Assembly (NCBI RefSeq): GCF_001194135.2
Contig: NC_068998.1
Span: forward strand, 49,880,615 to 49,944,614
DNA from: Octopus bimaculoides
Taxonomy: Eukaryota
Direction: 5' to 3'
DNA: 64,000 nucleotides
Shown here: piece after piece, positions 2,857-59,898 of the stretch
Position numbering within the stretch: the first letter of the stretch is position 1
Layout: each line of letters starts with the position of its first letter
The notes under the pieces: model-generated
The model's input: the letters and a program-made list of their open reading frames with translations, nothing else
Databases searched by the model: none
Told to the model about the DNA's origin: nothing
Program-made: the position numbers and the translations under genes

Positions 2857-3577
2857 ATGAAAAAATTTATTTGCATATTTTTTCTTCTTTTCGGTAAGTT
2901 GCTCTTCCCTCAGCCGGTTATATATATATATATATATATATATACATGCATTCTCTCTGTTAATTCCCTCGTGTTTCTTTCTAGTGAAAAGCGTAGGCTG
3001 GAAACGTAAAAGATCTGTTTTCCGAGCGTCAGACTAATGCACCTGCTTGTTGTTTATACACATATCTTCAGCTTTTGTTCTTTTGTAAATTGCATATATA
3101 TATATATATATANNNNNNNNNNNNNNNNNNNNNNNNNNNNNNNNNNNNNNNNNNNNNNNNNNNNNNNNNNNNNNNNNNNNNNNNNNNNNNNNNNNNNNNN
3201 NNNNNNNNNNNNNNNNNNNNNNNNNNNNNNNNNNNNNNNNNNNNNNNNNNNNNNNNNNNNNNNNNNNNNNNNNNNNNNNNNNNNNNNNNNNNNNNNNNNN
3301 NNNNNNNNNNNNNNNNNNNNNNNNNNNNNNNNNNNNNNNNNNNNNNNNNNNNNNNNNNNNNNNNNNNNNNNNNNNNNNNNNNNNNNNNNNNNNNNNNNNN
3401 NNNNNNNNNNNNNNNNNNNNNNNNNNNNNNNNNNNNNNNNNNNNNNNNNNNNNNNNNNNNNNNNNNNNNNNNNNNNNNNNNNNNNNNNNNNNNNNNNNNN
3501 NNNNNNNNNNNNNNNNNNNNNNNNNNNNNNNNNNNNNNNNNNNNNNNNNNNNNNNNNNNNNNNNNNNNNNNNNNNNN

Positions 3578-3624
<47 letters not shown>

Positions 3625-4307
3625 ATATGCACGTACATATGACTATGTATATGCATATATATGTGTGTGTGTATGTAATTCATCGTTTCTTCTTAAAATT
3701 GCTTTACTTTTGGAATACAAATCATCTGTAATGTGCAACTTGATTTGAAAATCTAGATTATCAATCTCCCTTCTGAATGCTACATGGCGTTTACATGCAA
3801 CTTACCCTAGAATTCAATATTTCGAAGGAAAAGAACTAATATACTCACTGACTATATGTGCAGAACACATAAAATATACCCACTCCAACAAATTTGTAAA
3901 GATAATTCGACAAGAATTCATAACGAGTAAAATTGAAAGCATAAATTTTGAAAATGACAATCGTACAATTAATGATCCCGTATTTTCTAGATCAACAACT
4001 TACGCACACAGAAAAAAAACAAAAAAAAAAAACAAAATCAAAATATAATATTCCTACATATGTTATTAAACGTCTACTTTCAGATTCAAGAGAAGAATTT
4101 ATACTCTAGTTGTAGAGAAACGTTTCATTTTATATGCCGTATTTCTGTGTAACCAACAAAGTAGAACATAAATCAAGTAGAAAAATATTTATTTTTTAAA
4201 ATTCTAGGTACGGCAGTCTCCAATTACTGCTTCAGAGAAGGCGCGAAACATTGCAAATATGTTCTAAGACGTTTTCCTGTAACGCACCCGGATATTAACC
4301 TCTGCAA
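2857..4307 (+). pseudogene. G1: truncated member of the 6-Cys tandem family; join(2857..2893,4208..4307); no exon B or tail exon found
   Basis: Signal exon MKKFICIFFLLF(G)|GTAAGT. Exon A after TTCTAG| gives GTAVSNYCFREGAKHCKYVLRRFPVTHPDINLC(K)|GTAAAT, with the same 37/100-nt lengths and phases as the paralogs. I found no B or tail exon in the gap-free 4.3-11 kb region. Confidence 0.75.
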
Positions 4308-4818: not shown

Positions 4819-6418
<1,600 letters not shown>

Positions 6419-9193: not shown

Positions 9194-9264
<71 letters not shown>

Positions 9265-11098: not shown

Positions 11099-14000
11099 AT
11101 GAAGATTATTATATGCATATTCTTTCTAATTTGTGGTAAGATAATTTTTCATAACCAGGCACACACAGACGCATGCGGATGTATACACGTGATTATGTAT
11201 GTATGTTTGTATGTATGTATGTATGTATGCATGCATGCATGCATGTATGTATGTATGTATGTATCTATGTATGGATTGATGGATGGATGGATGGATGGAT
11301 GGATGGATGGATAGATGTAAAGAAATATGTATGAAATATATATATATACATAAACACACATACATACATACATATTCACACACAAACATCTAGACATATA
11401 TTCACATATAGTTAGATGACTAAATATATATACTTGGTCGGGAAAACGAAAGCGTGTGGTTTCGAGTTCCACGTACACGAAAAACCCTACTCATTCTGTC
11501 GATCGCTTATATGCTCCATTAGTATACTATTTCTTTAGACATACCCAGTGATCGCTATAAGATTTTAAGCTTATAAAATACTATTGTTTTTATTATTTAC
11601 ACAATTGTAAAAATCGACGCTGCTTAGCAAAACCATCCCAGTAATATCTATCTATCTTTCTATATTTATATACATAAATATNNNNNNNNNNNNNNNNNNN
11701 NNNNNNNNNNNNNNNNNNNNNNNNNNNNNNNNNNNNATAGTGTATATATTTATATACCAACAACAAATATTAAAATACCAACAACACAGCAAATACTCTC
11801 ATTCCGTCAAATTTGCGACGAAACATCGGCAAGATATCGTAATGAAAATGATCGAACCATATTTTAGAAGCGAACAATCGTGGAATTAATGATCCCTATA
11901 TTCTAGATTTGCTAGGTGATGCTGTGGATATTTTGCAACAACCTTTAATTAAAAGCAACAAAATTTTGAAGTTTATGATCGACAAATATACGCATGTACA
12001 GAAAAACAAAAAAAAACAAAATATGATAATCCTATACTTGTTATTAAACGTCTGCTTACACTTTCAAATGAAGAATCATACCTTCGTTGCAAAGAAATGT
12101 TTGTTTCATTTTATATGCCTTATTTCTGCGTAAGTAATTGATTAGAAAATATGTCCTGGAGAAAAATATATAATTCTTAAAATTCTAGGCGCTGCAGGGT
12201 CCAGAATCTGTTTCATACAAGCCGATGACCAATGCAAATATGCTCAGAAACATTATCCTGTTCAGGAACCAGACATTCATCTCTGCAAGTATATGTACTG
12301 CTTTTACTTCTATCATCCGTACTACCACCTATAACATTTGCAAATTAATTTCTCATAATCACTTGTTCGTAATATATTATTTACAGAGGAGCAATCTATG
12401 TAATGCGAGGTTGAAATATATTTCACAAAATGTATTCCATCACTGATTCAGTAAATTTTACATCAATCTAACAACGCCCAAATTAAAATATTATCGGTTT
12501 TTTTCGTAGACCGAAAGTAAACGATAAACTATTTATCTCAACAGAAATTAATCTATAACGGCTTTGTCTGATTGACAAGAAATCAAAAAAAATTCTATCA
12601 TTGTCTCGAATGTGCCTTTTCTCGATTCTTCTTTATGTAACCCTCTTTGTATTTCTAATTAGTATCATTTCCACCGCAGAAATATAAAAAGTGATATTCT
12701 TACAGATATGAAGCGACCACAGAATTTTAGCCATGTAAATAATTTTGATTTTGTAGGGAGTTGAGCAGACAGAATAATTAGCACGCCAGTAAAAATGCTT
12801 AGCGGCATTTCATCCGTCTTTACGTCTGTGATCGACTTCATTCTTCATTATCCCGGTCCGATAAAATACGGAACCCACAAAAATTGTTCTTGACTTGTAC
12901 CAAAGTTGGAAATTAATATTTGAAATATTGTAAAGCGGTGAGTTAGACAAATCTTAAGGAGCCCGGGCAAAATTCCTAGCGATGTTTCGTCCCAAATTAC
13001 GTCGTTTGCTTCCCTTTCCGCCGAGGCCTATTTTGATTTCCATCTTTTCAGGTAGATAAAATAACTATCATTGGTGCACAAGAATGTTCTAAATCTGAAA
13101 TAATGTTTCACATACTGAACACCGTTACGTAACTCTTGACACGAAGTATAGTCTTTTACATTCAATACAAACATATTCTGACATAATAAAAGAAGTATTG
13201 ATTATCATTATTTTTTTTTATAATCAATGAAAGTTGAGAAACGTTTTATGTTCCAGACGACTATGGCTGTATGAAACCTGTTATATGAATAGCAATAATT
13301 TTTGTAGAAACGTCATGCTCCAAAACCGTAGAGAAGAAAACTGTCTTCGTAAGTAAAGTAATCTGTCTTATTAAAAGCGCTGTTTCAACAAATGAAATTT
13401 CAATCGCACACACACACACATGCAAATTTCATTAGATGATATATTAACCTTGTGAAGGGATGATTGCATCTACAGAATCGATATGATACCGGACAAAATT
13501 CTTAGAGGCATTTAAGGCGTATCAACGTACTGATTCCAAACTTCGTCGTGATCCACTGTACGTTAAGAAGAAGATCATATATATACCTGCAGAAATAAGA
13601 GCCCTGTATCTTTGAAATATTAAAAGGAACAGGGCAACTTTCTTTCGCCAAAGTTTTACAATCGTAATATGCTGCAACGCCTATGATTAGAAAAAATGGA
13701 ATTCAATTGTCAAATAGAAGGAGAAGGAGGAGGGCAGCAACAAGGGGGAGGAGGAAGATTATAATCATGAATATACACAAAATATAAGTTCCAGTCATCG
13801 GCATTTCCTGTTTAGTTTCTAAATGAATATTCGCCTTTATCCGTCGATTCATTGATAACTTAAATGCCAACTAATTGTTGCAGTTCGTTAAGTGTTTAGA
13901 ATACAATCGTCTATAAACGTGCTGTTTCATCAGCTCACCTGTAGATCCATGAGGAATGGAACTTTGTTTACTTTATTGATCGAGAACAATTTTACCATTG

Positions 14001-14167
14001 TATTTGATTTTCCTAGAAAACATAAACTATGTTGGTGAAATGAATCCACTAATTGTAAATGAATACCACATTAACATAGTTTTGCCTTGAATATTACAGA
14101 TGCTGTGACCTGCATCATTTCATTGAACAGTATATTATTGGTACTTCCTGTATCGATCTTATTTTAA
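11099..14167 (+). CDS. G2: secreted, putatively GPI-anchored 6-Cys protein, 98 aa; join(11099..11135,12189..12288,13257..13348,14100..14167)
   Basis: Canonical GT-AG at all junctions and an open frame: [104 protein letters not shown] at 14199-14204. Confidence 0.88.
12750..13070 (+). mobile_element. Nested SINE insertions in G2 intron 2 (equivalent at 16630-16990 in G3)
   Basis: ttagcacgcc...aaatgcttagcggcatttc.tccgtctttacg motif occurs twice, with ggtccgataaaatac; identical arrangement in G3. Confidence 0.65.
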
Positions 14168-14780: not shown

Positions 14781-15273
14781 ATGAAGATTATTATATGCAT
14801 ATTCTTTCTAATTTGTGGTAAGATAATCTTTCATAAACCTGCGATCTTAAAGGAACACCAGACACACACAGACGCATGCAGATGTATGACTTGCTTATGT
14901 ATGGATTGATGTATTAAAATATGCATGCATATATATATATATACATACGCACTCACATACATACATGCATGCATACATACATGCATACATACATACATGC
15001 AAATATATTCACACACATACATCTAGATATATATTCATATATATTTATGACTATATATATATTTGGTCGGGAAAACAAAGGGGTGTGATTTCGAGTTGCA
15101 CGCGTACGAAAACAACAAACTATCCCTTCGATGACTTATATGGACATTTATTATACTATTTCTCTAGTCATTACCCAGTGATCGCTATAGCTTTAAGCTT
15201 ATAAAATACTATTATTTTGATTATTTATAGAATTGTAAAAATCGACACTGCATAGCACAAACCATCGCAGTAA

Positions 15274-15333
<60 letters not shown>

Positions 15334-15334
15334 C

Positions 15335-15397
<63 letters not shown>

Positions 15398-18318
15398 CGC
15401 AGAGTTCGACTGTCCACCTCTTCTTTGCGGGGTCGATAACTTAAATACCTGTTGCGTACTGGGGTCGATATAATTGACTCGTTCCGTCCCCCAAAATTTC
15501 GGTCTTGAGTAAAAAAGATTATTTGGTCATTGTTTTTCTTAATTTTTTTTTTGTTTTTAATACAAATTCTTTACATTATGAAATTTGACATAAATATTCC
15601 CGATTATCAATGTCCATCCTCAATTACTCATGTCAGTTATATGAAACATATTTTAGCAATGAATATTTTCGAAGGGAACCAACTTGTATAGTCACTGACT
15701 ATATACCAACAACACATCAACTACTCTCATTCCGTCAAATTTGCGACGAAAATTCGGCAAGATATGTTAATGAAAATAGTCGAAACATAAATTTAGAATA
15801 TACGATCCCATATATTCTAGATTTACTAGGCATGCCATAATCGTTAATTAAATACTATCAAATTTTGAAGTTACTGATCAACAAGTATACGCACACAGAA
15901 AAAAACAATATCAAAATATGATAATCCGATACTTGTTATTAAACATCTACTTACACTTTCAACTGAAGAATTTATACCCGCGTTGCAAAGAAATGTTTCA
16001 TTTTATATGCCTTATTTCTGTGTAACCAATGAATTAAAGAAATAATTTAAGGAAAAAAGTATGCAATTTTTAAAACTTTAGGCGCTGCGGGTTCCAAAGT
16101 CTGTTTCATAGTAGCCAAGGACCAATGCAAATTTGCTCTGAAAAGTTATCCTGTTCAGAAGCCAGATATTCATCGCTGCAAGTATATATTCTTCTTTTAC
16201 TATCATTCGTGCTACCACCAATAACATTTGCAAATTTATCTCTCATAATCACTTGTTCGTAAAATATTACTGGCAGAGGAGCAATCTATGTTATGCGAGG
16301 TTGAAATATATTTAACAAAATGTATTCCATCCCCGATTCAGTAAATTTTACATCAATCTAACAACGCCCAAAATATTATCGGTTCTGTTCGTAGACCGAA
16401 AATGAATGATAATCTATTTATCTCATGACGTATTAATCCATAACGATTTCATCTGATTGATAAGAATACAAAAAAATTCTATCTTTGTCTCATATGTTCC
16501 TTTTCTTAAAAATCTTCTTTATGTAACCCTCTTTGTATTTCTAATTAGCATCATTTCCACTGCAGAAATATAAAAGTTGATATTCTCACAGATATGCAGC
16601 GACCACAACATTTTACCCATGCAAATACTTGTAATATTGCAGGGAGTTGAGCAGACAGAATAGTTAGCACGCTGATCAAAATGCTTAGCGGTATTTCATC
16701 CGTCTTTACGTTTTGCCTTGAAATACCGCCGTGATCAACTTCATCCTCCCTCAGTCGGGTCCCAATAAAATACGGAACCCACAAAAATTGTTCTTGACAT
16801 GTACCAAAATTTGAAATCAATATTTCAAATATTGTAAGGCGAGTTAGACAAATCTTAAGGAGCCCGGGCAAAATCCCTAGCGATATTTCGTCCGTCTTTA
16901 CGTTGTTAGCTTCACATTACGCCGAGTCCGACTTTGGTTTCCATATCTTCAGGGTTGATAAGATAACTGCCAATGGTGTACAAGGATGTTCTAAATCTGA
17001 AACAAATGTTTCGCTTATTCTTGACGCTTACATTCAGTACATAATATTCTGATATAATAAAAGTAACTATTATTTATGCTTATAATTAGTAACTCTTGAG
17101 AAACTTGCTATCTTTCAGACGACTATGGATGTATGAACTATGTTTTATTGATACAGATTATTTTTGCAGACACGTTATGCTCCTATACCGTAAAGAAGAA
17201 AATTGTCTTCGTAAGTGAAAGAATTTGTCCTATTATTAAAAGTGCTGTATCAACAAATGAAATTGAAATCAGAATTCCTTTTTAGTAGATTATGTGTTGA
17301 GATACTATGCTAGGAGTGTCGGTATTGTATTCAATTTCAAAAATTCACCTTAAACTAAATACTCCTTGAGTTGCTTCTCTACATCTGAAAGTATTAGTTA
17401 ATCAAACACGACTGTCCGTACACATCACATATTACTGTGCTAAAAGACATGTTTTTACCACGTGATTGATATTATGTAAGAAAAATGATTTGTTCTTCAC
17501 AGATGAGCAAACACCTACCAAACATTATGATGGCATGAGATAAAATTATTTTATAAATTTGTTTGCATTCCGGCAGTGTATATTCTTGCCCTTTTCAGCG
17601 CACATATATTTGTGTGAAAATATTCTACAAAAATAAATGGCGAAAAATCAGAGCCACTGCAGCATGATAACGGCTACTTTCACGTTACAGTCTACGCAAT
17701 ACGACAGAATTCATATTTTGCAAGTCTGATATTTAATACATTCAAATTAGAAAACAAAGATAAATTCCTTTTGCAATTCAGAAAATTTACTAGAAATAAA
17801 AAAAAATGGAAATCGACCTTCTTATTCTTGATTCTTAAGCTTAGAACAATATTACAGCTTTGTAACGTGGGCGTCAATATGATTTTGGTAACATATCATT
17901 GGAAATAGGTTCGCGACGAGTGCTACTTTACGATAGTTATAAAAACAAAAACCCCGTAAGCTGACCATCACTGAGTGTGAACGTTATTATTGCACTTCCT
18001 TCATCTCATTCTTAAACAGAAATGTAGTATATATGTATATATCTATATCAATGAACTGTCTAATGTAGATCTCTGGAGAATGGAAACTAGTTCACATTGT
18101 TGGTGGAGAACAATTTTCACACTGTATTCATTTTTCTAGAAAATGTAAAGGACGTTGGTGAAATGAATCCACTAATTGTAAATGAATAGCAAATTAACAT
18201 ATTTTTTGCCCTGAATACTACAGGGGCTGTGAGCTACATTGTATCATTGAACAGTATATCACTGGTTCTTCCTGTATCGATCATATTTGAAAGGAATCCG
18301 AAGATATGCAGCGTGTGA
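14781..18318 (+). CDS. G3: 6-Cys family protein, 107 aa, with extended C-terminus; join(14781..14817,16082..16181,17119..17210,18224..18318)
   Basis: Canonical splice sites: [107 protein letters not shown]. Signal exon identical to G2; AATAAA at 18345-18350. Confidence 0.87.
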
Positions 18319-24137: not shown

Positions 24138-24377
24138 ATGAAAAGTATTATAAGCCTACTGTTCATTATTTTTGGTAAGACGTTCTTTCAAAAACCGGTA
24201 CTCATAAGGCAACGGGTGACACGGCCAGGAACAAACAGACGCAAAGAAATGCATGAATGTACATATGTCTATATGTAACTATCTATCTGTCTGTCTGCCT
24301 GTCTGTTTGTCTGTCTGTCTGCATGTCTGTGTGTCTGTCTGTCTGTCTCTCTCTCTCTCTTTTTTTCTCTCTCTCTT

Positions 24378-24428
<51 letters not shown>

Positions 24429-27400
24429 NNNNNNNNNNTATATATGTATATATATATATACATAGATGCATACATGCAATACATATATGTCTATGTGTGT
24501 GAACGTGTGTGTGTGTGTATTTAACGTTGTCTGAGCATGCCATCATATATAGGTTCAGATTATTCGAATCAATTACTTTAAATTGTTGTTATTCTGTATT
24601 TTTTTCATCATTCCGATTTCGTATCAGAAGTGTTTCAATTTGTTCATTATTAGGTCATCGTCATTCTTAAAATTATCTCCGTTTTCAGTAGAATTTCTCT
24701 GCATTATGAAATTTAATATATAATGTCTCGTTTATCAACATTCTTCCTTATACTCACACGCCGGTTATATACAACATGCCTCAGGAAACAATATTTTCGA
24801 AGGAAAATACCTACAATACTCAATGATGATATGCTCAGACTACGTTACATACTCACGTTCTGCATACACTAACAAAGAAAGATTGGCAAGTTATCTTAAT
24901 GTAAAAAAGGAAACAACAAATATAGAAAAGAGCGATCGTAGAAATAAAGATCCCATCTATACTGGAGTTACTATAAGATGTAGAGGACATTTTGAAATAA
25001 CCTTTACGTGAAAGGAAGTAAAATGGCACTATATGATTTACAAGTATACGCACCAACAGAAAAAAAACTAAACATAATGTAATAATCCTGTATATGGAAG
25101 TAATCGTCTACTTATAGATTCAATTAAATAATTTATCTCTGATCGAAAATAATTGTTTCATTATATATTGACTTAATCCTGTATTCCCCCAAAGGGAGTA
25201 GTGAATAAATTGTGTAAAGCATATGTAATTGTTAAAATTGTAGGTGCTGTAGAATCCGAAATCTGTCTCAAGGTAGCCGAGAAACATTGTCAATACGCTC
25301 TGCATATTTATCCTGTAAAGTATCCAGATATGAATTACTGCAGGTATATATTCAGCTTTTACAACGATCGTTCACAGTACCGCCAATATAATTTGGAATT
25401 CTGCTCCACGAAATCAATTGTTCGTAGTGTATTACACACAGGAACAAACTATGATTCGATCAGAAATTTTTTATTTAAATCTCACGAGAGATATTCAGCA
25501 ACAGTACTTTGGAAAAAGGATTATTTGCCAACATAACATGGCATTCCTGGTTTAGGACGAATGTTACTGTAATTTAAGCCCAGGAGATATCGTCTCCAGC
25601 TGGCTATACGGCACGATCTGTGACTCACCTATTGTTTTGAGTCGAGTAGGGGTGCTAGATTCCCTTGTTCGAAAATATAAGGACATAAATCGTGTCGTAT
25701 AGCCAGCTGGAGACGATGCCACCTGGGGTTAAATTACAGCAACATTCGTCCTAAACCAAGACTGGCATGTCATGTTGGCAAATAATCTTTACTCCTATCT
25801 TATGATTGTTTTGAAATGTATTCCACCTCCGGTTCTGGAAATATTCCGTCAATCTTGCAACGCCTCAAACCAAATATTATCGCCTTTGACGATAGACCGA
25901 AAACGAAGGATAAATTACGAATTTCATTGTTTCAAACTCACTTTCCCATTGCGATTTCAACACCCATTCATCCATTGATGCGATACAAATAATTTCTATC
26001 ATAGACTAACATGTTTTCTTGGCCAACTGTTCTTTATGTAAAACTATTTGTATTTCTAATTAACATCATTTCCACCACAGAAATATAAAAGGGGATATTC
26101 TCAGAGAATGTTAATACTTCAGATATAGTATGATGGTGAACTAGCAGTATAGTTTGTACGCCGGTCCAAAAGCTTAGCGGCATTTCGTCCGTTTTTACTT
26201 TCTCAGTTTCATATTCTGCCGTATTTGATCTTCGCTTCCATCTTTCCAGGGTCGATAAAATATCTACCAGTGGTGAACAAGGACTATATTAATTTGAAAC
26301 CAATTTCTCGCATATTGTAAACCTTGACGCCAAGTATAATTTTCAATTCATACATACATACATATTCTGATTATAATAACAGAAACTATATTGATAATGT
26401 TTTATTATAATTACTAATACTTCAAACAAAAATTTGTTTTGCAGGCGTCTATGGATGTATGAAACTTGTTTTATTAATGTAGATAATCGTTGTAGAAAGG
26501 CTATGCGCGATATTCGTAAGGACAAATGCCCTGGTGAGTAAAGTAATTTGTCGTATTATTAAAGGTGTTATGTCAACAAAGTAAATTCAAATCACAATTT
26601 ACTTTTGCTGGACTCTATTTTGAGATAACAAGCCAGGGGCCTCGGCGTGGTACTCAATTTAAGCTATTGACTTCACTTTAACCCAATAAGTGCCAAATGT
26701 TTTATTCATATTTTTGGCGGTTGCCAGGTGTCTTACGAGTTAAAATAATATATAATATTTTAATTCATACGTAAATTATTTTGGAAATTTTGATAGTTCT
26801 TTCCAAAAGTTCCAAATAGGGATCGCTGAAAAATAACATATTTATCCAATCCTTTTCAATTGCAATAATAAACTCTGTGTGTGACTCTGTGTGAGTAACA
26901 TAATATAATATATAACATATAAGGAAACAAGCTGGCAGAATCGATAGCACACTGGACTAAATACCTGGTGACATTTTATCTGTAGCCACGTTGGGAGCTC
27001 AACGTTCCGCCGAGGTCGACTTTACATTTTACCGTTTCCTGGGTAGATGAAATAAGTAGCAGTTGAGCGCTTGTTTCAATCTAACGGACTTAGTCCCAAC
27101 CAAAACAATTGCTGTCATATCATTCTGCCAAAATTTGAAAAAATATAATAAAATCGAAGTTTATTTCATTTCTAAATTTATGTTCATCTTTTTGTGCTGA
27201 TTCATGGATAAAATAAGTGCCAACGTATTGCTGCAGTTCATTAACTCTATGAAAAGCTCTCTTCTGTAAGTGCGGTAGTTCACCAGATCACACGCAGTGC
27301 ACTGTGAAAGGAAAACTATCTCTGTATTACTGCTCGAGACCATTTCTCATACTGTATATAATTTTCTAGAAAATATGAAAGATATTCATGAAATAAATCC

Positions 27401-27543
27401 ATGAATTGTATATGAATTATTGGTTAACATATTTTTTTTTTGTCTTGAATTCTTCAGGAGATATGCCCGCTGATAACTCAGTGCCATGCATTGTAACATT
27501 AAACAGTATATTATTGGCTGTTCTCCAATGGGCCATATTTTAG
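24138..27543 (+). CDS. G4: putatively GPI-anchored 6-Cys protein, 103 aa; join(24138..24174,25244..25343,26445..26533,27458..27543)
   Basis: Canonical splice sites: MKSIISLLFIIFGAVESEICLKVAEKHCQYALHIYPVKYPDMNYCRRLWMYETCFINVDNRCRKAMRDIRKDKCPGDMPADNSVPCIVTLNSILLAVLQWAIF*. AATAAA at 27575-27580. Exon A lies within ORF 25201..25536. Confidence 0.88.
25513..25790. mobile_element. Palindromic MITE-like element / long inverted repeat (~100-bp arms) in G4 intron 2
   Basis: TGGTTTAGGACGAATGTTACTGTAATTTAAGCCCAGG...CGTCTCCAGCTGGCTATACGGCACGAT is mirrored by ATCGTGTCGTATAGCCAGCTGGAGACG...CCTGGGGTTAAATTACAGCAACATTCGTCCTAAACCA; pairing extends outward to GATTATTTGCCAACA/TGTTGGCAAATAATC. Confidence 0.75.
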
Positions 27544-27780
27544 TGGAATTCGAACATATGCACCGTGTGAAGCTAATAAATATAATAAATTTGTAACAAA
27601 CAATTTTGGTAGTTTTGCATTATGTTAAATCTTATCTTCTGTATAAAAATAACTTCTAAAATTATATTTTAATAAACATGTCAAGAAATATATCTATTTC
27701 GTGTCCATACTATATCACTTTACATTTACTGTCATTGCAATATGATATTTATTTGCAGTCTACTACTGTATATATATATA

Positions 27781-33972: not shown

Positions 33973-35039
33973 TATGTGTGAAATTTGAAACGTAACAGAT
34001 AGTGCCGTACAAGGATTTAGATCCTATAAGGAACTTCGGAATGAAAGCTACAATAAGCATGTGTTTACTCATTCTCTGTAGGTAACTCTATTGGACGTTG
34101 AATTTTTCCCAGAAACAAAATCTATTTAAAATTACCATATGATCTACTTAAACAAACAGCGTATGTTTTTTTCACAACCATATGTGTAAAGACTGATATT
34201 CAAACACCGAAACACACCCCCACACATGCACACACATTCACACACACACATAAACAAAGTCACACAGGTGAACGCTATATTTCGTTATCTGCCTCTCCAT
34301 GTGTATATGAATGGGCATGTGTATGTCTGAGTGTATATGTATTTGCAAGTACGTGTGTTTGTGAAATAATGCATCGATCTTTTTAAAAAAGTTACGTTCC
34401 TATCATTGCGTGTTCGTTTCTTTTTCGCATCTGATAAATGTATATTATGGGACTGTTATTTTGACTAGTTGTGTCTATTTATCAACCGATGAGAAACATC
34501 GACATCGCCGGATCCTTCTGGACCAGGCGTTAAGCGTCGCACCCGTGAGGACTCGATGCTAGCCGTGAAGTGATCTTAGTGCAACTAAAATAAATTAATA
34601 CTAAAATCATATATTTCTCGCACACAGAGACGCACATGTACTCATACAAACACACATATATATACATAAATGGAAATTCCTGTCTGTCTGCCTGTCCATC
34701 GGCCTGTTACAATCTAGCTGCCCAGACCATGGAAGCGATCTCCACCAAACCTTTTGAAATGACATCTTGTTCAATTATAGGCTAATAGGATTTCAATAAA
34801 AATTGATGACGGACTGCGGGGTTGGGTTATTACATGAGAAAATGACAGCTGTGCAATAGTGTTAGGTTCAGGGAATCATGGCATAATGAGCGAGGCTATG
34901 TATCCCTGCTCGGTATGTGGTGAAGCAATTAACTGACCTCTAATTATAATTATGCTTATAATTATTGAATATTTGTATAATGTTATCTATATTTCGCCAT
35001 GAAGACATGAGCGAAATTAACAGCTATGGGATTACCGGG

Positions 35040-36000
35040 TGCTAAAATCTTTGTCCAAACTTTATTGTGTTGCTTTGTAACACAAATCGCAATAATCTAA
35101 AGAGAAAATTATTTGATGGAATAGATTTGTTTGACCCCTTTGCGAAATTATGTAGGCATATTTGTCGCCTGTCATTGTGGCCAATATTGAGATATAAGGT
35201 AGAAACATCCAGGGTTACCAAAAAACAGTTCCCGACATGACCCTGGTGTTTAAAAAAAACGTAGTTGATCTCAGACACAAAAGCAAAAGTATCCCGAATA
35301 TAAGGAACTTTATCCTTTTGTGACAAGGCGGAGTAGAAACCCGCCATTCCAAAAACTTGGATGTACATTCATATCCGCTGCAAATTGGGCGCATTGGAGG
35401 AAATCTTTTGAACGTTCTGTGTATTTTAGGAAGACCATAAAATACAGATGTTCTTTCTGACCATAAATTCCGGATTCTGCATTATTACTGAATTTGTTTA
35501 CTCCCATTTTCAGAATTATTTTGCCAAGTCCCTCTCTGCAATTGTGTTTTGGGTTGACAGGTAATACTTCATATGAAGTCTTGTTATTTAGAACGGCTTC
35601 ACAAACCGGAATACACTCGCTGTTCTCCCTAATTACGTTAGCATCTCCCATACCCGCCATTTTGATAACAATAGAATCATTATCAGTTAGAGGTCGTAGT
35701 GCGTAACGATGGGAATTTGTGAGATTATTCCAGTATTTCTTCCCACTTGTTTTAAGGATATTTTAAAAGCCTGTATTTTCTTGTTTCCTCTTTTTTTCTG
35801 TCTTTGTGTTCGCCTGTTATAAAATTGTAACTGAAAGACTGATGATGTCCTTCCATCACCGTGTGGACGCTGGTTGCTCTCGTTCATACTTTAAATTTAA
35901 ATTTCTATAATTTTGAATTTTTATCACTTCTTATGTTGAACTTCACAAAGACAGGCTTACTGTCGTAATATCGTTCAGCCAATAACATATCTATTAGAAA
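35040..36000 (-). mobile_element. Penelope-like RT fragment
   Basis: ORF 35042..35368 contains FLVTLDVSTLYLNI (PLE RT motif LDVxSLYTNI) and RFVLQSNTIKFG. Confidence 0.8.
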
Positions 36001-36019
36001 CCAATCGCTTTCTTCACGT

Positions 36020-36025
36020 TGACTA

Positions 36026-36066
<41 letters not shown>

Positions 36067-36088
36067 GTTAGTAGTAGTAGTAGTAGTG

Positions 36089-36133
<45 letters not shown>

Positions 36134-36348
36134 CCTTCGCATAGTTTCTAACGCTGGAGATGTACTACAGTGTCAGCTGTTCACTACCAGTGCACTATAA
36201 TAACACATCCTACTTAACGAGCACCTTCCGGAGTATTCGAGCGGTTCCAAGCAGTGCTGTTTTCTACAAGTGCTCAACCCTTGTTGCAGCCCCTATTTGT
36301 TCCACGTAAATCTCGAGATTTTGGCCCACCATTCCCAGGGCTCCGGCA

Positions 36349-36393
<45 letters not shown>

Positions 36394-36420
36394 CATTATT
36401 ATTATTATTATTATGATTAT
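36020..36420 (-). mobile_element. 3' end of an R4/Dong-like LINE between (ATT)n/(AGT)n tracts
   Basis: Minus strand reads GALGMVGQNLEIYVEQIGAATRVEHL*KTALLGTARILRKVL, the typical C-terminus after a REL endonuclease, with a microsatellite tail. Confidence 0.65.
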
Positions 36421-37439
36421 TTAATCTATTTTAATTCAGCGAACTGGTAAACTTGTTAGGACACCGTACGAAATGCTTAGCAGATTTTAGTCCTTTACCT
36501 TCTGAATGGAAATTCCGACCAGGTCCACTTTGCCGTTCAGCCTGTCAGGTCGATAAAATAAGTAGGAGCTGAAGCGAAGAAGAAGAAGAAGAAGAAGAAG
36601 AAGAAGAAGAAGGAGGAGGNNNNNNNNNNTAAGTAGGAGCTGAAGCGAAGAAGAAGAAGAAGAAGAAAAACTACAACAACATTAATTATAATAAAGATAC
36701 ACTGGAAATTTATTTACCAGCTTATTATAATTACTGTTTAATTTCCACATCTATTTTTATCTTTTTCTGCCAAAATTATTTCCAATGGTTTACAGCTGCT
36801 TAGTCTACGTATTGCTCTCGTTTGTAAGTTGTGTATTTCACCTGATTACACGCAGAGCTCTTATGAATGGAGACTGTTTGCGTTATTGGTCGAGAACAAT
36901 CCTCACACTTCATGTAATTCTCGAGAAAATGTCAACGATATTGACGAAATAAATCCATCAATTCTAAATGACATGACTAATTCATTAACATATTTTTTGT
37001 TTCAATTTATTTAGGTGACGTTCCCAAATCTAGGTTAGCGCCCTGCGTTGTTACATTAAACAATATATTATTGGCCGTTCCTGAATCTACCATATTTTAG
37101 TGGAATTCGAACGTATGCACGATGTGAGGCTAACATATATGAAAAATGTAAGTGAGACATTTTCGAAAGTTTTGCATTATATTAAATCTTATATTCAGTA
37201 TATAACAAATGGAAGTAACTAAATAGCTTCGAAATAATATTTTTATACCCATGCCAAGAAACATTATATCTAATTCGTTTGAATACAATGTCACTTTACA
37301 TCTACTGACGTTGCTATGTGATATTTATTTTCAATTCATTACTGCATCAATGCTATAAGAGTAGTGTCAGATAATTTGAAAATGAATTGCTCTTCAATAT
37401 ATATTCAGTTAGAAAAGTTTCACGAACAAGCTATTTTGG

Positions 37440-38190
37440 AGGAGCATTATCTTATTTTCCTACGTTTTATTATCATCTCCTTCGAAAAAGTCATCTTCCG
37501 CATCTGTACTCCGGCCGCACTCTTCCTACCACTTTTGGAATCCGGTTTAGAAATTGATTTCTGCAAGCGTTACGCGGAATTTCCGCAACTCGACCTGGAT
37601 CACGACAACTGTGGGAAAACGATGATCTTGGAGTCTTCATCTTCGGGAAGAGAGGAAATTCCGCAGATGTTAAATCTGGGGAAAATGTTGGTTCCGTAAG
37701 CTATATTATGTTGATTTTGTTGAGAAACTTACGAGCGTGGAGATCTCAGTGATAGAGTGCATTGTCATTGTGAAAATTACAATTTTTGCGCTCCACAGAC
37801 TCGGTTGTTTTCGGAGAACGTACTCATTCACAAGCTTCAAAAGGTCATTGATTGTCTTGTGACGATGCTCATGCTCGAGCTGATGAGTTTTCCACATTTC
37901 ATCGGTGGGTGGGGGGACGCTGGTAGAATGTCTTCAAGTTCTCTAATCCACTTCTAGGATCATTCTACCACTTTTGAAGCGTCAATGCCACTCGAGACAT
38001 CACATACGACTCACGTAAGCTTGCCGAATCTTTCTCAATGTTTCTGTAGCAGATTTCGCAATTTAATGCAGCGTATCACGTTTGCTTTCTTGTCGAACCC
38101 TCGTCCTTGACAAAATCGCAAACTACAGCATACACATAATCACAAATTCACTTGTGAAGTAAACACAACGATATCTCTCGATTTCACTGT
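37440..38190 (-). mobile_element. mariner relic
   Basis: Decayed transposase-like sequence resembling the other mariner copies in the window (e.g. cgtaagcttgccga shared with 51405-51420). Confidence 0.5.
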
Positions 38191-41111: not shown

Positions 41112-50491
<9,380 letters not shown>

Positions 50492-55427: not shown

Positions 55428-58400
55428 ATGAAAGCTTGTGTATTCGTATTTATTCTCAGCTTTTGTAGATATCATATGCCAGGTATTTATTTTCCAAAAC
55501 ATTTCTATTTTAAAATGTGGATGTGATTGTACATGTCTCTTAAATACCGCCCATCTTTCTAACACACATGTCACGCACATACACATCTACACACACAAAC
55601 ACACACGCATACAGATAAACACACAGACACACACACACACATGGATAAAAAGTTAGTATTGTTTAGAAGTAATGCAGAGAAATATTATAATATAGCTATT
55701 ATCTAGGATGTCAATGGGTTAAGATATACGTTCCGTTGTTCTAAGAAAATAAATATTAGGTATATGAAAAGACTATATTGTACTTACTTATGATATGGGA
55801 CAAACCATTTTTAAACCAGTGGGGGAGTTTTTATTTTGTTAGGTTATAATACGAGTAACAGGTAATTTCCCTTTGTTTCGTATGGCTAAACTTGTCAGTT
55901 GATATTATGATGAAAAGCATCATGTGTTTCACTAGAGAAATATGTCTATAAGGTTTGTGGATAATGTGGATGTATATACGCGTGCGTGTAGTTTGCCGCC
56001 TTTCGTGTTGATTTTATACTTCATATTTTCTGTTTATTAATGGTATATATTTTATTATAGATCTATGCGATCATGGTATGTATGATTCATCGACTGTGTT
56101 ATTTCGTTTCAGTAGTGGATTACTTTTATTTTGGAATATAGTTACAAGTGTAAGTCTTTTGTTGTGTAGATTCTAAAGTCCGGAGGCAATCGTATTAAGT
56201 GTCTGGAATATGCTATTGGCATTGTTTAGAAACAAATTGAAGATATTGTTTGTTCAAATTACTGAACATGTTTCATGAATTATCGATGTTCGATATCTTT
56301 ATGTTTCTTTGCATTCAGAGCGTATGATGACATGCTTTATTGTCGGTGTGCTGTTGTTAAGGCATATATGTGAGATCATTGTCCCGGAACATATCGCTTT
56401 TGTGTTTTAGCTTCAGGTAAAACCTTGCATTTATTTTCTTTTATGAAGCGTGCGTTCAGTTTATCTCGCTTTATTTATGCTTTCATTCAAACACTTATGA
56501 GTTATGCTTTCGTTTTCTCCTTCAGTATGTCTGCGAAGTATGACATATAACGTTTATATTTTGGACCGTTTTTTGAATATTGGCTTATTTTGCTCAGTGA
56601 TGCATATGATATCTAACCCTTGTTTGATGTGATTGAGATTTGTTCGGTTATATGGCGTTCAAACAGTGGTAATCGATGGATAGATTCTAAATGATCGCTA
56701 TATGATGTTACAGTATGTTACTTACGTTTTCTGATCTTACACTGATATATTTTAAATCACTGGGAGTGAGTGTCTTCGCATATATTACGGTTGTATGTTT
56801 CTTTCTCTTTGTGCGTGTTGTGTGCATATGACTTCGAATGTTTCACTAGCTGACCAGATATCGCATTTTCGGACTGTATGTATTGTGATTATGTAGCTTT
56901 GTTGACATAATTTCGTGTGTATATACTCTCCCTGTGGTAGTCATATACATGTTTTTATGCGTTTGCCTGAAAACTGGAGGTCTGCAGCATGTTTACTGGT
57001 CATACGATTTTCATATTGTATATTTTGTACGACTGTAGCTAAATTCTTCACTATTGTCTCTAGTGAAAAGTTTGAGATATCTATGCTATTTAGGAGTTGT
57101 TTGCTAAAAACACCCTATGAGATTTGTACCCAGTTATTTCTCCAGTGAGACTGAACAGTGCTAGGAACGCGCTGTGGGTCTTTTCAGGGGGTTGTTGCTT
57201 ATTGTTTGTTGGTGATGTCTGTGCTATATATTACTGTTTGTCTGGGAATAGGAATGGACTTAGTGTTCGTTTGATTCTGCTCTGTCATATATTGTAGTCA
57301 GACGGAATTATTGAAAGATTGGGATTTTATTTGTCACAAGTAACCATCCAACCAGAAAGTGGAAACCTTGCAATCATTATCACACACAAATGAATATACA
57401 TCATCTTAAAACAACCCTTCTTTTTTTCTGGTGGATTCACCCTAAAATCATTGATTCATACAAAAATGAATGCTTTAATTAAAATTGGATGAATTTATAT
57501 ATGCTCATCGTTATAAGAAATGAACGACATTAAACACAATGCTAAATTTATAGTTCTTTCAGCGATACAGTCATGCATCGTGTCTGCACAAACATACTGC
57601 AAACTTGCTTTGGATCAGTATCCTCTGCGGAATCCAGATGTCAATTACTGCAAGTACATACATATTCATGCTATTATTATTTTTTATTAGTTCACATCTA
57701 ATTAGATTTTATTTAGTTTAACTTTATTAGATAACAATCAATGTTTTCAAAATACCGTAAACTCTTAATTGTTAATTCACTGTTGTTTCATGCATTGGTT
57801 CAAAGCTACTAATAGTCAGGTTAAGTCATTCTAACATGTTATTGCTCAGTGCTTGAACACAAGTTATTTTATCGAAATAACGATTGCGAAATATAACAAC
57901 AGCAATAATATGGTAATTAGTTTGGCGTTCTACGGAACCAAGTTTTAACCGGATAACTAAATGCACACACACATATACATATACATATATATATATATTT
58001 ATATATATATATATATATNNNNNNNNNNNNNNNNNNNNNNNNNNNNNNNNNNNNNNNNNNNNNNNNNNNNNNNNNNNNNNNNNNNNNNNNNNNNNNNNNN
58101 NNNNNNNNNNNNNNNNNNNNNNNNNNNNNNNNNNNNNNNNNNNNNNNNNNNNNNNNNNNNNNNNNNNNNNNNNNNNNNNNNNNNNNNNNNNNNNNNNNNN
58201 NNNNNNNNNNNNNNNNNNNNNNNNNNNNNNNNNNNNNNNNNNNNNNNNNNNNNNNNNNNNNNNNNNNNNNNNNNNNNNNNNNNNNNNNNNNNNNNNNNNN
58301 NNNNNNNNNNNNNNNNNNNNNNNNNNNNNNNNNNNNNNNNNNNNNNNNNNNNNNGGGGGGGGGGGTGTCAGTCTGAAGACAGTCCATAGGATTCGGAAAG

Positions 58401-59012
58401 AGTTGGTTGAGTCTAATGGTGATTACGAAGGTGTTTTGGAGTGATCACTAGTGATAGCAATGTTATGTCCCCATTTCTCTTCCCACATAGACTCAAACTC
58501 AAGACGGAGGCCTACATCAAGTGTCTGGAAGCGATAAAGCTGCCAGCGATGAAGAGGGTTGCCGCTGCAAGACCCTGTATCTGACTACAGGATTCTGCAC
58601 CATGCCACACATGCAGCAGATGCCAGCCATGGTAGTCAGACTATTTCTCCGATCACAATCACCCCTAGCATCTGGCCATCTAACTCCCGAAACTGCGATC
58701 CCCTTGATAATTACGTGTGGGGCAAAATTTCTTGAACTGAACGCAATGATTATGGCAGCATTCATCATTTTAAACACGGAGACCGTAAAGAAGAGTTGCA
58801 GGAGATTCCGAAGTTATCTCGACTCCGTGGTTGATATCAATGGCGATTTTACTGAATAAATTTAGTCGTTAGAGTTTCATGATATTTTATGTAATTTTCG
58901 TAAATATATCTGTTAAAATAAGATGTCTGATTTATTTTTATTTTCAAGTAATAATTTAGACGAAAGTTTATTCACCGCACCTTATACACACACACACATA
59001 CACCCCCCCCAC

Positions 59013-59067
<55 letters not shown>

Positions 59068-59077
59068 NNNNNNNNNN

Positions 59078-59147
<70 letters not shown>

Positions 59148-59898
59148 TTTGTGTGCTTGTGTGTGTTTGTGCGTATTCGTATTTGTGCCTAAATTGGTCA
59201 ACAATCCACACACTCTTGACATTTATCGTTTGTCGAAATATGGGCAGCAAATGTGTCAGGGTGAATTGAATTTGGTTCCATAAATTGATCTCAAATATAA
59301 ACGACTTAACATTTGCACGATATTATTTTAAAGAAAGCTAAGAGACTTTATCTACTTAAGAAATATAATACAAAACGATGTTTGCTGTTGTAAATGATTT
59401 TGTGACAAACGATTAAATGCAACTTTCGTATATTTTCCAGCCGTCTAAAAGTCTTACATGTATGCTATCCACCGGGTTCTAATTGCTTTCGCTCTATTCA
59501 CTTACTCCGTGAGCATGAATGTCAAAGTAAGCTATTTCACTTAATCCATTATTATTGATAAAAATACTGTATCACTCTCCTAGTTTCAAAACACCGATTA
59601 TTTTAGATAATTTCCTTTGTGAAGTCAATTCTAAGTGGATAAAATATTGAATCAATGATCATTTTGTAAAGGTGAACTTATCCTTTACCAGAAGAAAAAA
59701 ATATATTACTACATTGCATTCTTTTATGATGGGACACAGGAAGAGCATCTTCCTGTATATATTGTTTTTATATGTGTGGTTCTTTATAGCATTGAAGTCA
59801 GATTTTCATTTATAGTTTGCTGAGTACCAATCAACTGGATGTATTTTATTGTTTTACTAGGAACCAGTTATATATACATCTGGAAAATCTACATAGTG

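What the first reader, a model, noticed from the sequence alone, without database searches (positions are those of the whole stretch)
24138..27543. Cys core resembles the RGM N-terminal / neuritin (CPG15) helical module
Seen: G4 NYCRRLWMYETCFINVDNRC and G2 [20 protein letters not shown] follow C-x2-L-x2-Y-x2-C-x7-C. From my recollection of the families, RGMa N-terminal domain reads [20 protein letters not shown] (same C-x2-L-x2-Y-x2-C-x7-C; a disulfide-linked three-helix bundle that binds BMP). Neuritin is a small GPI-anchored 6-Cys protein with C-x8-C-x7-C and a YP in the long loop. Inference: these genes could be stand-alone RGM-N/neuritin-like mini-proteins, hence candidate BMP modulators or neurite cues expanded in a large-brained invertebrate. 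DUF19/CPG4-type domains are an alternative. The outer Cys spacings differ, so the likeness may be convergent.
Basis: inference. Interest (0 to 1): 0.78.

Follow-up and report, generated by a model that had tools for sequence, protein, structure and literature searches.

The report
Octopus-only three-helix cysteine mini-protein family
The finding is one gene in a tandem array of an uncharacterised, fast-evolving gene family found only in octopuses, encoding small, probably membrane-tethered three-helix proteins that weakly resemble the BMP-binding end of repulsive guidance molecules but lack their BMP-contact residues and show no resemblance to neuritin beyond cysteine spacing.

Summary
Window 24138-27543 is a four-exon gene (G4, 103 aa) on an Octopus bimaculoides chromosome, one of at least nine tandem paralogues. 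The quoted motifs exist after splicing. The N gap lies in intron 1 between two microsatellites.

The family has 24 clusters at 50% identity. Every named one is from Octopus and uncharacterised. The shared domain is about 55 residues with six invariant cysteines. AlphaFold2 on 43 domains gives a confident three-helix bundle (pLDDT 94.6). Most single-domain members carry a signal peptide and a GPI-signal-like tail.

RGM_N is the only recurrent Pfam hit (21 of 43 domains, all below threshold). One fused four-domain model scores 37.9 bits against a 24.2-bit cutoff. RGMB is the top PDB sequence hit, and cysteine-preserving shuffles show more than spacing. But the match covers only about 30 residues, hhalign gives 22% probability, Foldseek does not retrieve RGM structures, and the RG(D/N) loop and His that bind BMP/GDF5 are absent in all 43.

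Neuritin, DUF19/CPG4 and GDNF/GAS1 find no support. Domain dN/dS is about 1 against O. vulgaris. I read it as a diversifying surface-protein family, possibly RGM_N-derived, not a conserved BMP modulator.

The parts
24138..24174 (+). G4 exon 1: ATG plus signal peptide (MKSIISLLFIIF-G), phase-1 GT donor
   Evidence: homologous exon 1 found upstream of G1, G2 and G3
24429..24438 (.). Assembly gap inside G4 intron 1, flanked by (CT)n and (TA)n microsatellites; non-coding
   Evidence: same gap in the public record
25244..25343 (+). G4 exon 2 (100 nt, enters in phase 1): Cys1-Cys3, helix 1 and the YP..PD loop
   Evidence: exon-2 HMM E = 9e-13
26445..26533 (+). G4 exon 3 (89 nt, leaves in phase 1): Cys4-Cys6, helices 2-3; the RGM_N-like stretch spans the exon 2/3 junction
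   Evidence: exon-3 HMM E = 2.9e-14; RGM_N match at residues 39-63
27458..27543 (+). G4 exon 4: short hydrophilic spacer (GDMPADNS), hydrophobic C-terminal tail ending the protein (GPI-signal-like), then stop
   Evidence: dN/dS 0.3 against O. vulgaris
27575..27580 (+). AATAAA 32 nt after the G4 stop, at a position conserved in G2 and G7
2857..4307 (+). G1: exon 1 (2857-2893) and exon 2 (4208-4307) only; no exon 3 or 4 detected
11099..14167 (+). G2: complete four-exon paralogue, 98 aa (11099-11135, 12189-12288, 13257-13348, 14100-14167)
14781..18318 (+). G3: four-exon paralogue whose last exon has lost the seventh Cys, the original stop and the conserved AATAAA
34041..37100 (+). G5: exon 1 (34041-34077) and exon 4 (37015-37100) only; no exon 2 or 3 was detected between them, and a 10-N gap lies at 36620-36629
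41112..45842 (+). G6: exons 1-3 (41112-41148, 44266-44365, 45757-45842); exon 4 not found
47893..50491 (+). G7: exons 2-4 (47893-47983, 49428-49513, 50406-50491); exon 1 not found
55428..59525 (+). G8: exon 1 (55428-55464), exon 2 (57554-57653), exon 3 (about 59442-59525)
   Evidence: matches P0128
63748..63787 (+). First exon of a further family member (MLKLFVIISALIA-G), matching the start of LOC128249882 (P0144); the rest lies beyond the window

Best explanation
G4 is one member of an Octopus-restricted, tandemly amplified and rapidly diversifying gene family.

Each basic unit has four exons: a signal-peptide exon, two exons that together encode the domain, and a tail exon. The domain is about 55 residues, C-x7-C-x16-C-x8-C-x7-C-x11-C. 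The tail exon encodes a small-residue spacer followed by a terminal hydrophobic stretch.

The product is most likely secreted into the ER, folded into a three-helix bundle locked by three disulfides, and tethered to the outer membrane leaflet by a GPI anchor. The seventh Cys sits in the hydrophobic tail and would be removed with the GPI signal.

The domain is most likely a very divergent offshoot of the RGM N-terminal domain. I put true homology at about 45% and convergence on the same scaffold at about 35%. It has lost the RGM C-terminal neogenin-binding domain and the RG(D/N)-Leu-His BMP-binding surface.

I infer that it acts as a variable extracellular recognition or ligand-binding module, not as a conserved BMP co-receptor. 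The scaffold (Cys, Pro20, Arg31, hydrophobic core), the signal peptide and the tail are constrained, while the helix surfaces change at about the neutral rate or faster.

Because the two domain exons together enter and leave in phase 1, units can also be concatenated into multi-domain proteins. This happens in family members on another chromosome and perhaps by read-through across G2, G3 and G4.

Shown: gene models, the array, family distribution, invariant residues, predicted fold, and the weak but specific RGM_N signal. Inferred: GPI anchoring, disulfide pairing, homology as opposed to convergence, and function.

The confidence of 0.5 is for the statement as a whole. By component it is about 0.9 for the family and gene anatomy, 0.7 for GPI tethering, 0.45 for RGM_N ancestry, and 0.85 that RGM-style BMP binding is not retained.
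For: Gene models and array.

Identity of the locus: O. bimaculoides CM046618.1, LOC128249887.

Family distribution: a profile search of 1.84 billion representatives gave 24 clusters at E < 1e-3. All named ones are O. bimaculoides, O. vulgaris or O. sinensis; most are annotated 'uncharacterized' or 'hypothetical', one 'Secreted protein' and one 'GDNF/GAS1 domain-containing protein'.

Domain: 43 distinct domains have six invariant Cys and near-invariant P20 and R31.

Fold: AF2 gives pLDDT 94.6 and pTM 0.78, with helices at 2-18 (kinked), 28-38 and 44-57.

Tail: GPI-like architecture in most single-domain members, with tail dN/dS about 0.3.

RGM_N signal:
- It is the only recurrent Pfam family: 21 of 43 domains, best E = 2.1e-4.
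- P0122 scores 37.9 bits against a 24.2-bit cutoff. P0127 and P0138 score about 22 bits. Matches in P0153 extend to model positions 14-69 of 70.
- The top four PDB sequence hits for the family profile are all RGMB.
- hhalign gives P = 9.6e-4.
- Cysteine-preserving shuffles: 0 to 9 of 1000 reach the real score. In the reverse direction z = 14, with 15 of 43 domains above the 99th percentile.
- The RGM N-domain is three helices with three disulfides (PMC7354924).

Diversification: domain dN/dS is 0.94-1.30 against O. vulgaris copies and 0.67 between G2 and G3. The signal exon is 37 of 37 identical between G2 and G3.
Against: - Foldseek of the high-confidence model against PDB returned nothing below E = 8, and no RGM chain.
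- The RGM_N match covers only about 25-30 residues. hhalign probability is 22%, and a plain C-x7-C coincidence between the two halves of the domain itself already gives P = 0.005.
- Single domains never reach the Pfam cutoff. The one protein that does is a fused gene model whose score is summed over four stretches.
- Outer Cys spacings differ from RGM: x7 against x4, x16 against x22, and x11 against x21.
- No GPI predictor, expression data or model coordinates were available.
- Family members are related to one another, so the shuffle statistics overstate independence.
- dN/dS of about 1 could reflect relaxed constraint instead of diversifying selection. The estimates rest on 61 codons and on uncertain orthology.
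Confidence: 0.5

Rival explanations
1. An orphan, lineage-specific cysteine-rich family with no ancestry in RGM. The three-helix, three-disulfide scaffold and the C-x8-C-x7-C core arose independently, and the RGM_N signal reflects structural convergence (an amphipathic helix in register with the cysteines).
For: - All named hits are from Octopus.
- Foldseek finds no RGM chain.
- The match is confined to helix 2 and the start of helix 3.
- Outer Cys spacings and the functional residues differ.
- hhalign probability is only 22%, close to the level of a C-x7-C coincidence.
Against: - RGM_N is the only recurrent Pfam hit among 24,736 models, and RGMB tops the PDB sequence search.
- The similarity survives cysteine-preserving shuffles in both directions.
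- Some members align over most of the RGM_N model.
- Neuritin has the same core spacing and gives no such signal.
Confidence: 0.35
2. The units are neuritin (NRN1/CPG15) homologues: small GPI-anchored six-Cys neurite cues.
For: - The architecture is the same: signal peptide, six Cys with C-x8-C-x7-C, a YP in the long loop, and a GPI-like tail.
Against: - No Pfam NRN1 hit at E <= 10 in 43 domains or 8 full-length proteins.
- hhalign probability is 0.1-0.4%.
- Cysteine-preserving shuffles reach the real score in 57-176 of 1000 trials. In the reverse direction z = 1.1, with 0 of 43 domains above the 99th percentile.
Confidence: 0.04
3. The real product of this locus is not a set of stand-alone mini-proteins but a multi-domain GPI-anchored protein, made by splicing the domain exon pairs of G2, G3 and G4 together as in the NCBI models (isoforms X1-X6 of LOC128249887). 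G4's own exon 1 would then be unused.
For: - NCBI models P0121 and P0145-P0149 chain the units in frame.
- The exon 2 plus exon 3 pair enters and leaves in phase 1.
- G3 has lost its own terminal Cys, stop and conserved AATAAA.
- Multi-domain relatives exist: P0123 has nine domains, and P0153 is 401 aa.
Against: - Each of G2, G4 and G7 keeps an intact ATG signal exon with a GT donor, its own tail exon with a stop, and an AATAAA at a conserved position.
- The signal exon is perfectly conserved between G2 and G3.
- The same four-exon units recur in gap-free O. vulgaris.
- The O. vulgaris fused model spans 69.5 kb and three segmental copies, which looks like over-chaining.
- Several NCBI isoforms break the domain.
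Confidence: 0.3
4. The domain is a GDNF/GAS1-type (GFR-alpha-like) cysteine-rich helical domain, as UniProt's automatic name for A0A0L8GPX5 implies.
For: - UniRef names P0124 (a fusion of G5 exon 1, G6 and G7 from this window) 'GDNF/GAS1 domain-containing protein'.
- From my own knowledge of the families, not tested here: GFR-alpha and GAS1 are all-helical, disulfide-rich and GPI-anchored.
Against: - Pfam GDNF gives no hit at E <= 10 for P0124, seven other full-length proteins or 43 domains.
- No GFR-alpha, GFRAL or GAS1 chain appears in the PDB profile search or the Foldseek search.
Confidence: 0.06
5. The proteins are released effector peptides, such as toxins, antimicrobials or pheromones. 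The conserved signal with a hypervariable mature peptide would then reflect an arms race, and the hydrophobic tail would be a propeptide, not a GPI signal.
For: - The signal exon is identical while the mature domain diverges. dN/dS is about 1, the genes are tandemly amplified, and the scaffold has six Cys.
- Some members lack the tail: P0129, P0133 and P0137.
Against: - The tail is under purifying selection and has canonical GPI-signal architecture in most members.
- Multi-domain members are atypical for such peptides.
- No tissue data were available.
Confidence: 0.12

Closest known systems
RGM N-terminal domain (Pfam PF06535; RGMA, RGMB, RGMC/hemojuvelin; PDB 4UHY, 4UHZ, 4UI1, 6Z3J)
   Same: - Three alpha-helices, six Cys and three disulfides.
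- An identical central spacing of C-x8-C-x7-C, with Leu at Cys3+3, Tyr/Phe at Cys3+6, an aromatic residue before Cys3 and Asp four residues upstream.
- The parent proteins are GPI-anchored.
- It is the only family with a recurrent, shuffle-robust sequence signal.
   Different: - Outer Cys spacings differ (x7/x16/x11 against x4/x22/x21), and helix 3 is shorter.
- There is no RG(D/N) loop and no His at Cys5+7.
- There is no C-terminal domain.
- The domain occurs alone or as tandem repeats.
- It is restricted to Octopus and evolves fast.
- Single domains score below the Pfam cutoff, and Foldseek finds no match.
Neuritin / CPG15 (Pfam PF15056 NRN1)
   Same: A small protein with a signal peptide, six Cys with C-x8-C-x7-C, YP in the long loop, and a GPI-like tail that starts just after the last Cys.
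   Different: No profile or HMM similarity beyond cysteine spacing. The loops are much longer (x9/x24/x27).
GDNF/GAS1 (GFR-alpha-type) domain
   Same: From my own knowledge of the families, not tested here: helical, disulfide-rich, on GPI-anchored proteins. UniProt's automatic name for one fused model from this window uses this label.
   Different: From my own knowledge, that domain has ten Cys and five helices, against six Cys and three helices here. No Pfam, PDB-sequence or Foldseek signal was found.
Families of secreted cysteine-rich peptides with a conserved signal and a hypervariable mature region (for example mussel MgCRP-I, PMC4558851, abstract seen; conotoxin-type evolution, from my own knowledge)
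   Same: The signal exon is conserved, the six-Cys mature part is fast-evolving, and the genes are tandemly amplified and lineage-restricted.
   Different: The fold is helical and the protein has a GPI-like tail. Multi-domain versions exist. There is no sequence relationship.

Membership tests
RGM_N (PF06535) | Sequence scores above the Pfam gathering cutoff (24.2 bits) | tested here: inconclusive
   G4 scores 10.9 bits as the whole protein and 13.5 bits as the domain alone. 21 of 43 domains hit below the cutoff, best E = 2.1e-4. P0127 scores 22.2 and P0138 22.0 bits. Only the fused four-domain O. vulgaris model P0122 passes, at 37.9 bits summed over four stretches.
RGM_N (PF06535) | Profile-profile match to RGM N-domains | tested here: inconclusive
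   hhalign of A6 against four RGM sequences gives P = 9.6e-4, probability 22%, over 30 columns. As calibration, a C-x7-C coincidence within the domain gives P = 0.005.
RGM_N (PF06535) | Three-helix bundle stabilised by three disulfides | tested here: met
   The AF2 model has pLDDT 94.6 and three helices, and there are six invariant Cys. The RGM description comes from PMC7354924. This is a prediction only, and the pairing of the cysteines could not be read.
RGM_N (PF06535) | Structural superposition on solved RGM N-domains | tested here: not met
RGM_N (PF06535) | Six-Cys framework C-x4-C-x22-C-x8-C-x7-C-x21-C | tested here: inconclusive
   The central C-x8-C-x7-C is identical. The outer spacings are x7, x16 and x11.
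RGM_N (PF06535) | BMP/GDF-binding determinants: the RG(D/N) loop after Cys5, Leu103 and His106 (RGMB numbering) | tested here: not met
   0 of 43 domains have R-G after Cys5 and 0 of 43 have His at +7. A hydrophobic residue at +4 is kept in 40 of 43, mostly Phe. The determinants are taken from PMC7354924.
RGM (whole protein) | C-terminal neogenin-binding domain following the N-domain | tested here: not met
   G4 ends 29 residues after Cys6. Multi-domain relatives contain only repeats of the same domain.
Neuritin NRN1 (PF15056) | HMM or profile similarity to NRN1 | tested here: not met
   No Pfam hit at E <= 10. hhalign probability is 0.1-0.4%. The shuffle tests are not significant.
Neuritin NRN1 (PF15056) | Small six-Cys protein with a GPI anchor | not testable with these tools
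   The tail architecture is compatible. No GPI predictor or experiment was available.
DUF19 / CPG4 | Pfam HMM match | tested here: not met
   Not among the hits at E <= 10 for 43 domains and 13 full-length or partial proteins.
GDNF/GAS1 domain (PF02351) | Pfam HMM match, or a sequence or fold match to a GFR-alpha chain in PDB | tested here: not met
   No PF02351 hit. No GFR-alpha or GAS1 chain appears. The label exists only as UniProt's automatic name for P0124.

The most novel reading that the evidence does not exclude
Octopuses have turned an RGM_N-derived three-helix module into a combinatorial surface-recognition system. Dozens of rapidly diversifying domain cassettes, each an exon pair that enters and leaves in phase 1, sit in tandem arrays. 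They are expressed either as single GPI-anchored mini-proteins or spliced across neighbouring genes into variable multi-domain proteins. This would parallel the clustered protocadherin expansion as a source of cell-surface diversity in a large nervous system.
Probability: 0.1. Interest if true: 0.8.

Novelty: new variant of a known kind. Interest (0 to 1): 0.5.

Why it matters
If the RGM_N relationship is real, this would be, as far as I know, the first case of that BMP-binding module existing alone, or as tandem repeats, and amplified into a large lineage-specific family. It would show how a conserved signalling domain can be stripped of its binding surface and reused as a fast-evolving scaffold.

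Either way, it defines an unnamed Octopus gene family. There are at least 24 clusters and at least 43 distinct domains. Most lie on one chromosome; the multi-domain members and P0127 sit on other large contigs. The family has a confident predicted fold and a clear evolutionary signature: constrained scaffold, signal and tail, with free surfaces.

Public annotations currently mis-join these genes into chimeric models, so expression and evolutionary studies of cephalopod novelties will mis-count them. The work also removes an attractive but unsupported label, that of neuritin-like neurite cues or BMP modulators.

Tried and rejected
- A word-indexed homologue search with G4 found nothing, although fused models containing G4 are in the database. 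The index is simply insensitive here.
- phmmer of G4 against PDB found nothing. The seven-sequence window profile gave only an antibody CDR hit.
- The first AF2 model, from window paralogues only, was weaker (pLDDT 80) and also gave no Foldseek hit.
- The third homologue search, with the RGMB N-domain, returned only two proteins. The RGM profile therefore had to be built from three PDB-verified human paralogues plus one bird sequence. That limits the power of hhalign.
I trimmed them at junction residues instead.
- MAFFT mis-aligned exon-3 fragments onto exon 2. I tested this as a possible internal duplication and found no support.
- An exact look-up of the stand-alone G4, G2 and G3 proteins found none in the collection.
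- The public chromosome record is the same assembly, so it cannot close the gap.
- Literature searches for the LOC identifiers, the SRR run and octopus-specific secreted families found nothing on this family.
- Rfam found nothing in the window.
- The intronic hairpin is no more conserved than its intron.
Full report
**What is in the window**

The window is eukaryotic: AT-rich, full of microsatellites, with 15 N gaps. It is identical to Octopus bimaculoides chromosome record CM046618.1 (GCA_001194135.2). Window position x corresponds to locus L001 position x + 7144.

The finding's coordinates run exactly from the ATG to the stop of a four-exon gene that I call G4. The exons are 24138-24174, 25244-25343, 26445-26533 and 27458-27543. 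All junctions are AG/GT. The CDS is 312 nt and encodes 103 aa:

MKSIISLLFIIFGAVESEICLKVAEKHCQYALHIYPVKYPDMNYCRRLWMYETCFINVDNRCRKAMRDIRKDKCPGDMPADNSVPCIVTLNSILLAVLQWAIF

Each spans the exon 2/3 junction, so they exist only in the spliced product.

**The assembly gap**

The flagged gap (24429-24438) lies inside intron 1 between (CT)n and (TA)n runs, so no reading frame crosses it. Its true length cannot be checked, because the public record is the same assembly. The order of exon 1 then exon 2 is nevertheless the same in paralogue G3, whose intron 1 is gap-free. It is also the same in the gap-free O. vulgaris locus L002.

**A tandem array**

tblastn, blastn and exon-level HMMs find at least nine units on the + strand:
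- G1: exons 1 and 2 only.
- G2: complete, 98 aa.
- G3: complete, but its last exon has lost a Cys, the stop and the conserved AATAAA.
- G4: complete.
- G5: exons 1 and 4 only.
- G6: exons 1-3.
- G7: exons 2-4.
- G8: exons 1-3.
- The first exon of a further gene at 63748.

Exon sizes and phases are conserved: 37 nt, then 100 nt, then 86-92 nt, then the tail exon. The two domain exons together enter and leave in phase 1. G2, G4 and G7 each have an AATAAA 31-32 nt after their stop, at a conserved position.

**The family**

A profile built only from window sequences was searched against 1.84 billion representative proteins. It found 24 clusters at E < 1e-3. Every one that carries a name is from O. 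bimaculoides, O. vulgaris or O. sinensis. Most are annotated only as uncharacterised or hypothetical; one is named 'Secreted protein' and one 'GDNF/GAS1 domain-containing protein'. One unnamed genomic contig from run SRR11869391 is 64% identical to the G3 region. It probably comes from a more distant octopod.

Several database entries are gene models that fuse neighbouring units of this very window:
- P0121 and its isoforms fuse G2, G3 and G4.
- P0124 fuses G5 exon 1, G6 and G7.

Multi-domain relatives also exist on another chromosome, for example P0123 with nine abutting domains.

Forty-three distinct domains align without difficulty. They share six invariant Cys in the pattern C-x7-C-x16-C-x8-C-x7-C-x11-C. 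Pro20 and Arg31 are near-invariant, and there is a YP..PD..YC-x-R-L signature.

**Fold and topology**

AlphaFold2 on that alignment gives mean pLDDT 94.6 and pTM 0.78. The helices are at 2-18 (kinked at 12), 28-38 and 44-57. This is a three-helix bundle, with cysteines placed as follows:
- Cys1 and Cys2 on helix 1.
- Cys3 and Cys4 at the two ends of helix 2.
- Cys5 and Cys6 at the two ends of helix 3.

Coordinates are not returned by the tool, so the disulfide pairing is inference only. By geometry I expect Cys3-Cys6, with Cys1 and Cys2 pairing to Cys4 and Cys5.

Most single-domain members have an N-terminal signal peptide and a tail of about 30 residues. The tail has 10-17 hydrophilic, small-residue-rich positions followed by 12-17 hydrophobic residues that end the protein. 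This is the classical layout of a GPI-attachment signal. In the G2, G4 and G7 subgroup a seventh Cys lies inside the hydrophobic stretch. It would be removed with the signal, leaving six.

- There is no NRN1 Pfam hit at E <= 10.
- hhalign probability is 0.1-0.4%.
- Cysteine-preserving shuffles of neuritin reach the real score in 57-176 of 1000 trials.
- In the reverse direction z is 1.1.

*DUF19/CPG4.* It never appears among the hits.

*RGM_N.* Here the picture is different.
- It is the only Pfam family hit recurrently: 21 of 43 domains, best E = 2.1e-4.
- The family profile's four best PDB sequence matches are all RGMB, at E = 0.04-0.19.
- hhalign gives P = 9.6e-4 over 30 columns.
- The family HMM scores RGMB, RGMA and hemojuvelin above 1000, 991 and 998 of 1000 cysteine-preserving shuffles respectively.
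- An RGM HMM scores the 43 real domains 14 standard deviations above shuffled sets.
- The fused O. vulgaris model P0122 exceeds the Pfam cutoff, at 37.9 against 24.2 bits. In P0153 the match spans model positions 14-69 of 70.
- The RGM N-domain is described as three helices with three disulfides (PMC7354924).

The limits on the RGM_N link are real.
- No single domain passes the cutoff.
- The aligned core is only helix 2 plus the start of helix 3.
- hhalign probability is 22%. A mere C-x7-C coincidence between the two halves of the domain already gives P = 0.005.
- The outer Cys spacings differ.
- Foldseek against PDB does not retrieve any RGM chain. This is a weak negative for so small a helical domain, but still a negative.

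*GDNF/GAS1.* UniProt's automatic name for P0124 ('GDNF/GAS1 domain-containing protein') is not reproduced by Pfam, PDB-sequence or Foldseek searches.

**Function**

RGM binds BMP2 and GDF5 through three elements:
- the RG(D/N) loop right after Cys5;
- Leu103, which inserts into a hydrophobic pocket;
- His106, which stacks on a Trp.

The mutations G101R, L103E and H106R abolish binding (PMC7354924). In the octopus family none of the 43 domains has R-G after Cys5, and none has His at +7. Only the hydrophobic position is kept, usually as Phe. There is also no neogenin-binding C-terminal domain. RGM-style BMP modulation is therefore unlikely.

The evolutionary pattern points elsewhere.
- Between G4 and its three O. 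vulgaris counterparts the domain has dN/dS of 0.94-1.30, while the tail exon has about 0.3.
- Between G2 and G3 the signal exon is 37 of 37 identical. The domain exons (80-84% identity) are no better conserved than intron 2 (86%), and dN/dS is 0.67.

With scaffold residues invariant, an average near 1 implies that surface positions change at or above the neutral rate. I therefore favour a diversifying, probably GPI-tethered, extracellular recognition or binding module. These estimates rest on few codons and on uncertain orthology.

**Gene structure caveat**

NCBI chains G2, G3 and G4 into one three-domain protein with six isoforms. The shared entry and exit phase of the domain exon pair makes this possible, and G3's decayed terminal exon fits it.

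On the other side, each unit retains an intact start exon, tail exon and poly(A) signal. The fused O. vulgaris model spans three segmental duplicates. Only RNA-seq junction counts can decide between the two readings.

**Verdict**

- Helical, disulfide-locked and RGM_N-like: plausible but not established.
- Neuritin-like: not supported.
- BMP modulator: unlikely.

The real result is an unnamed, Octopus-restricted, fast-evolving family whose public gene models are mis-joined. I rate it a new variant of a known kind, of moderate interest.

Noticed in passing
window 25511-25795 (intron 2 of G4); L002 22643-22932, 49915-50207, 73159-73466: A long inverted repeat with 112-nt arms, 87% complementary, a 61-nt loop and an RNA MFE of about -176 kcal/mol. 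It is single-copy in the window and sits at the same intronic position in three O. vulgaris G4-like genes. The whole intron aligns at 78%, so the hairpin is inherited and not specially conserved. It could be an old MITE or a double-stranded RNA (editing) substrate.
   Followed up: partly
window 11099-11135 vs 14781-14817: The signal-peptide exons of G2 and G3 are 37 of 37 identical. Their domain exons are 80-84% identical and intron 2 is 86% identical. This is either a conserved-signal, variable-mature-peptide pattern or local gene conversion.
   Followed up: partly
window 18224-18318: The terminal exon of G3 has lost the tail Cys (now Tyr), the ancestral stop (TAA to GAA, extending the ORF by 9 codons) and the conserved AATAAA (now AAGAAA). 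The unit may survive only as internal cassette exons, or it may be decaying.
   Followed up: partly
window 2857-27543 (NCBI LOC128249887); window 34041-50491 (UniProt A0A0L8GPX5): Public gene models fuse neighbouring array members into chimeric multi-domain proteins. Some isoforms use cryptic splice sites that break the domain. UniProt labels one fusion 'GDNF/GAS1 domain-containing protein', which could not be reproduced.
   Followed up: yes
L002 (O. vulgaris OX597831.1:17169723-17259231): The orthologous region in O. vulgaris contains three near-identical copies of a two-gene unit of about 27 kb (a segmental triplication). Its intron 1 is much longer, 4.7 kb against 1.1 kb.
   Followed up: partly
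window 2857-4307 and 4308-11098: G1 has a signal exon and exon 2 but no detectable exon 3 or 4 in the 6.8 kb before G2, and no large gap that could hide them. It is likely a truncated copy, or its exons are used only as an alternative 5' end (NCBI isoform X2 starts with G1 exon 1).
   Followed up: partly
L003 (Logan SRR11869391 contig, 2116 nt): A genomic contig from an unidentified sequencing run carries an exon-2-like ORF and aligns to the G3 region at 64% over 1.5 kb, including intron. This suggests the family exists in a more distant octopod.
   Followed up: partly
window 26150-26275, 26960-27060: Short interspersed repeat-like segments in G4 introns 2 and 3, containing GGTCGATAAAAT-type motifs. 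I recall similar sequences as common in octopus genomes, but they were not analysed.
   Followed up: no
window, whole: Fifteen N gaps total 5,071 bases. Several lie where family exons are missing (G5-G8), so the copy number and completeness of the array are underestimated in this assembly.
   Followed up: partly
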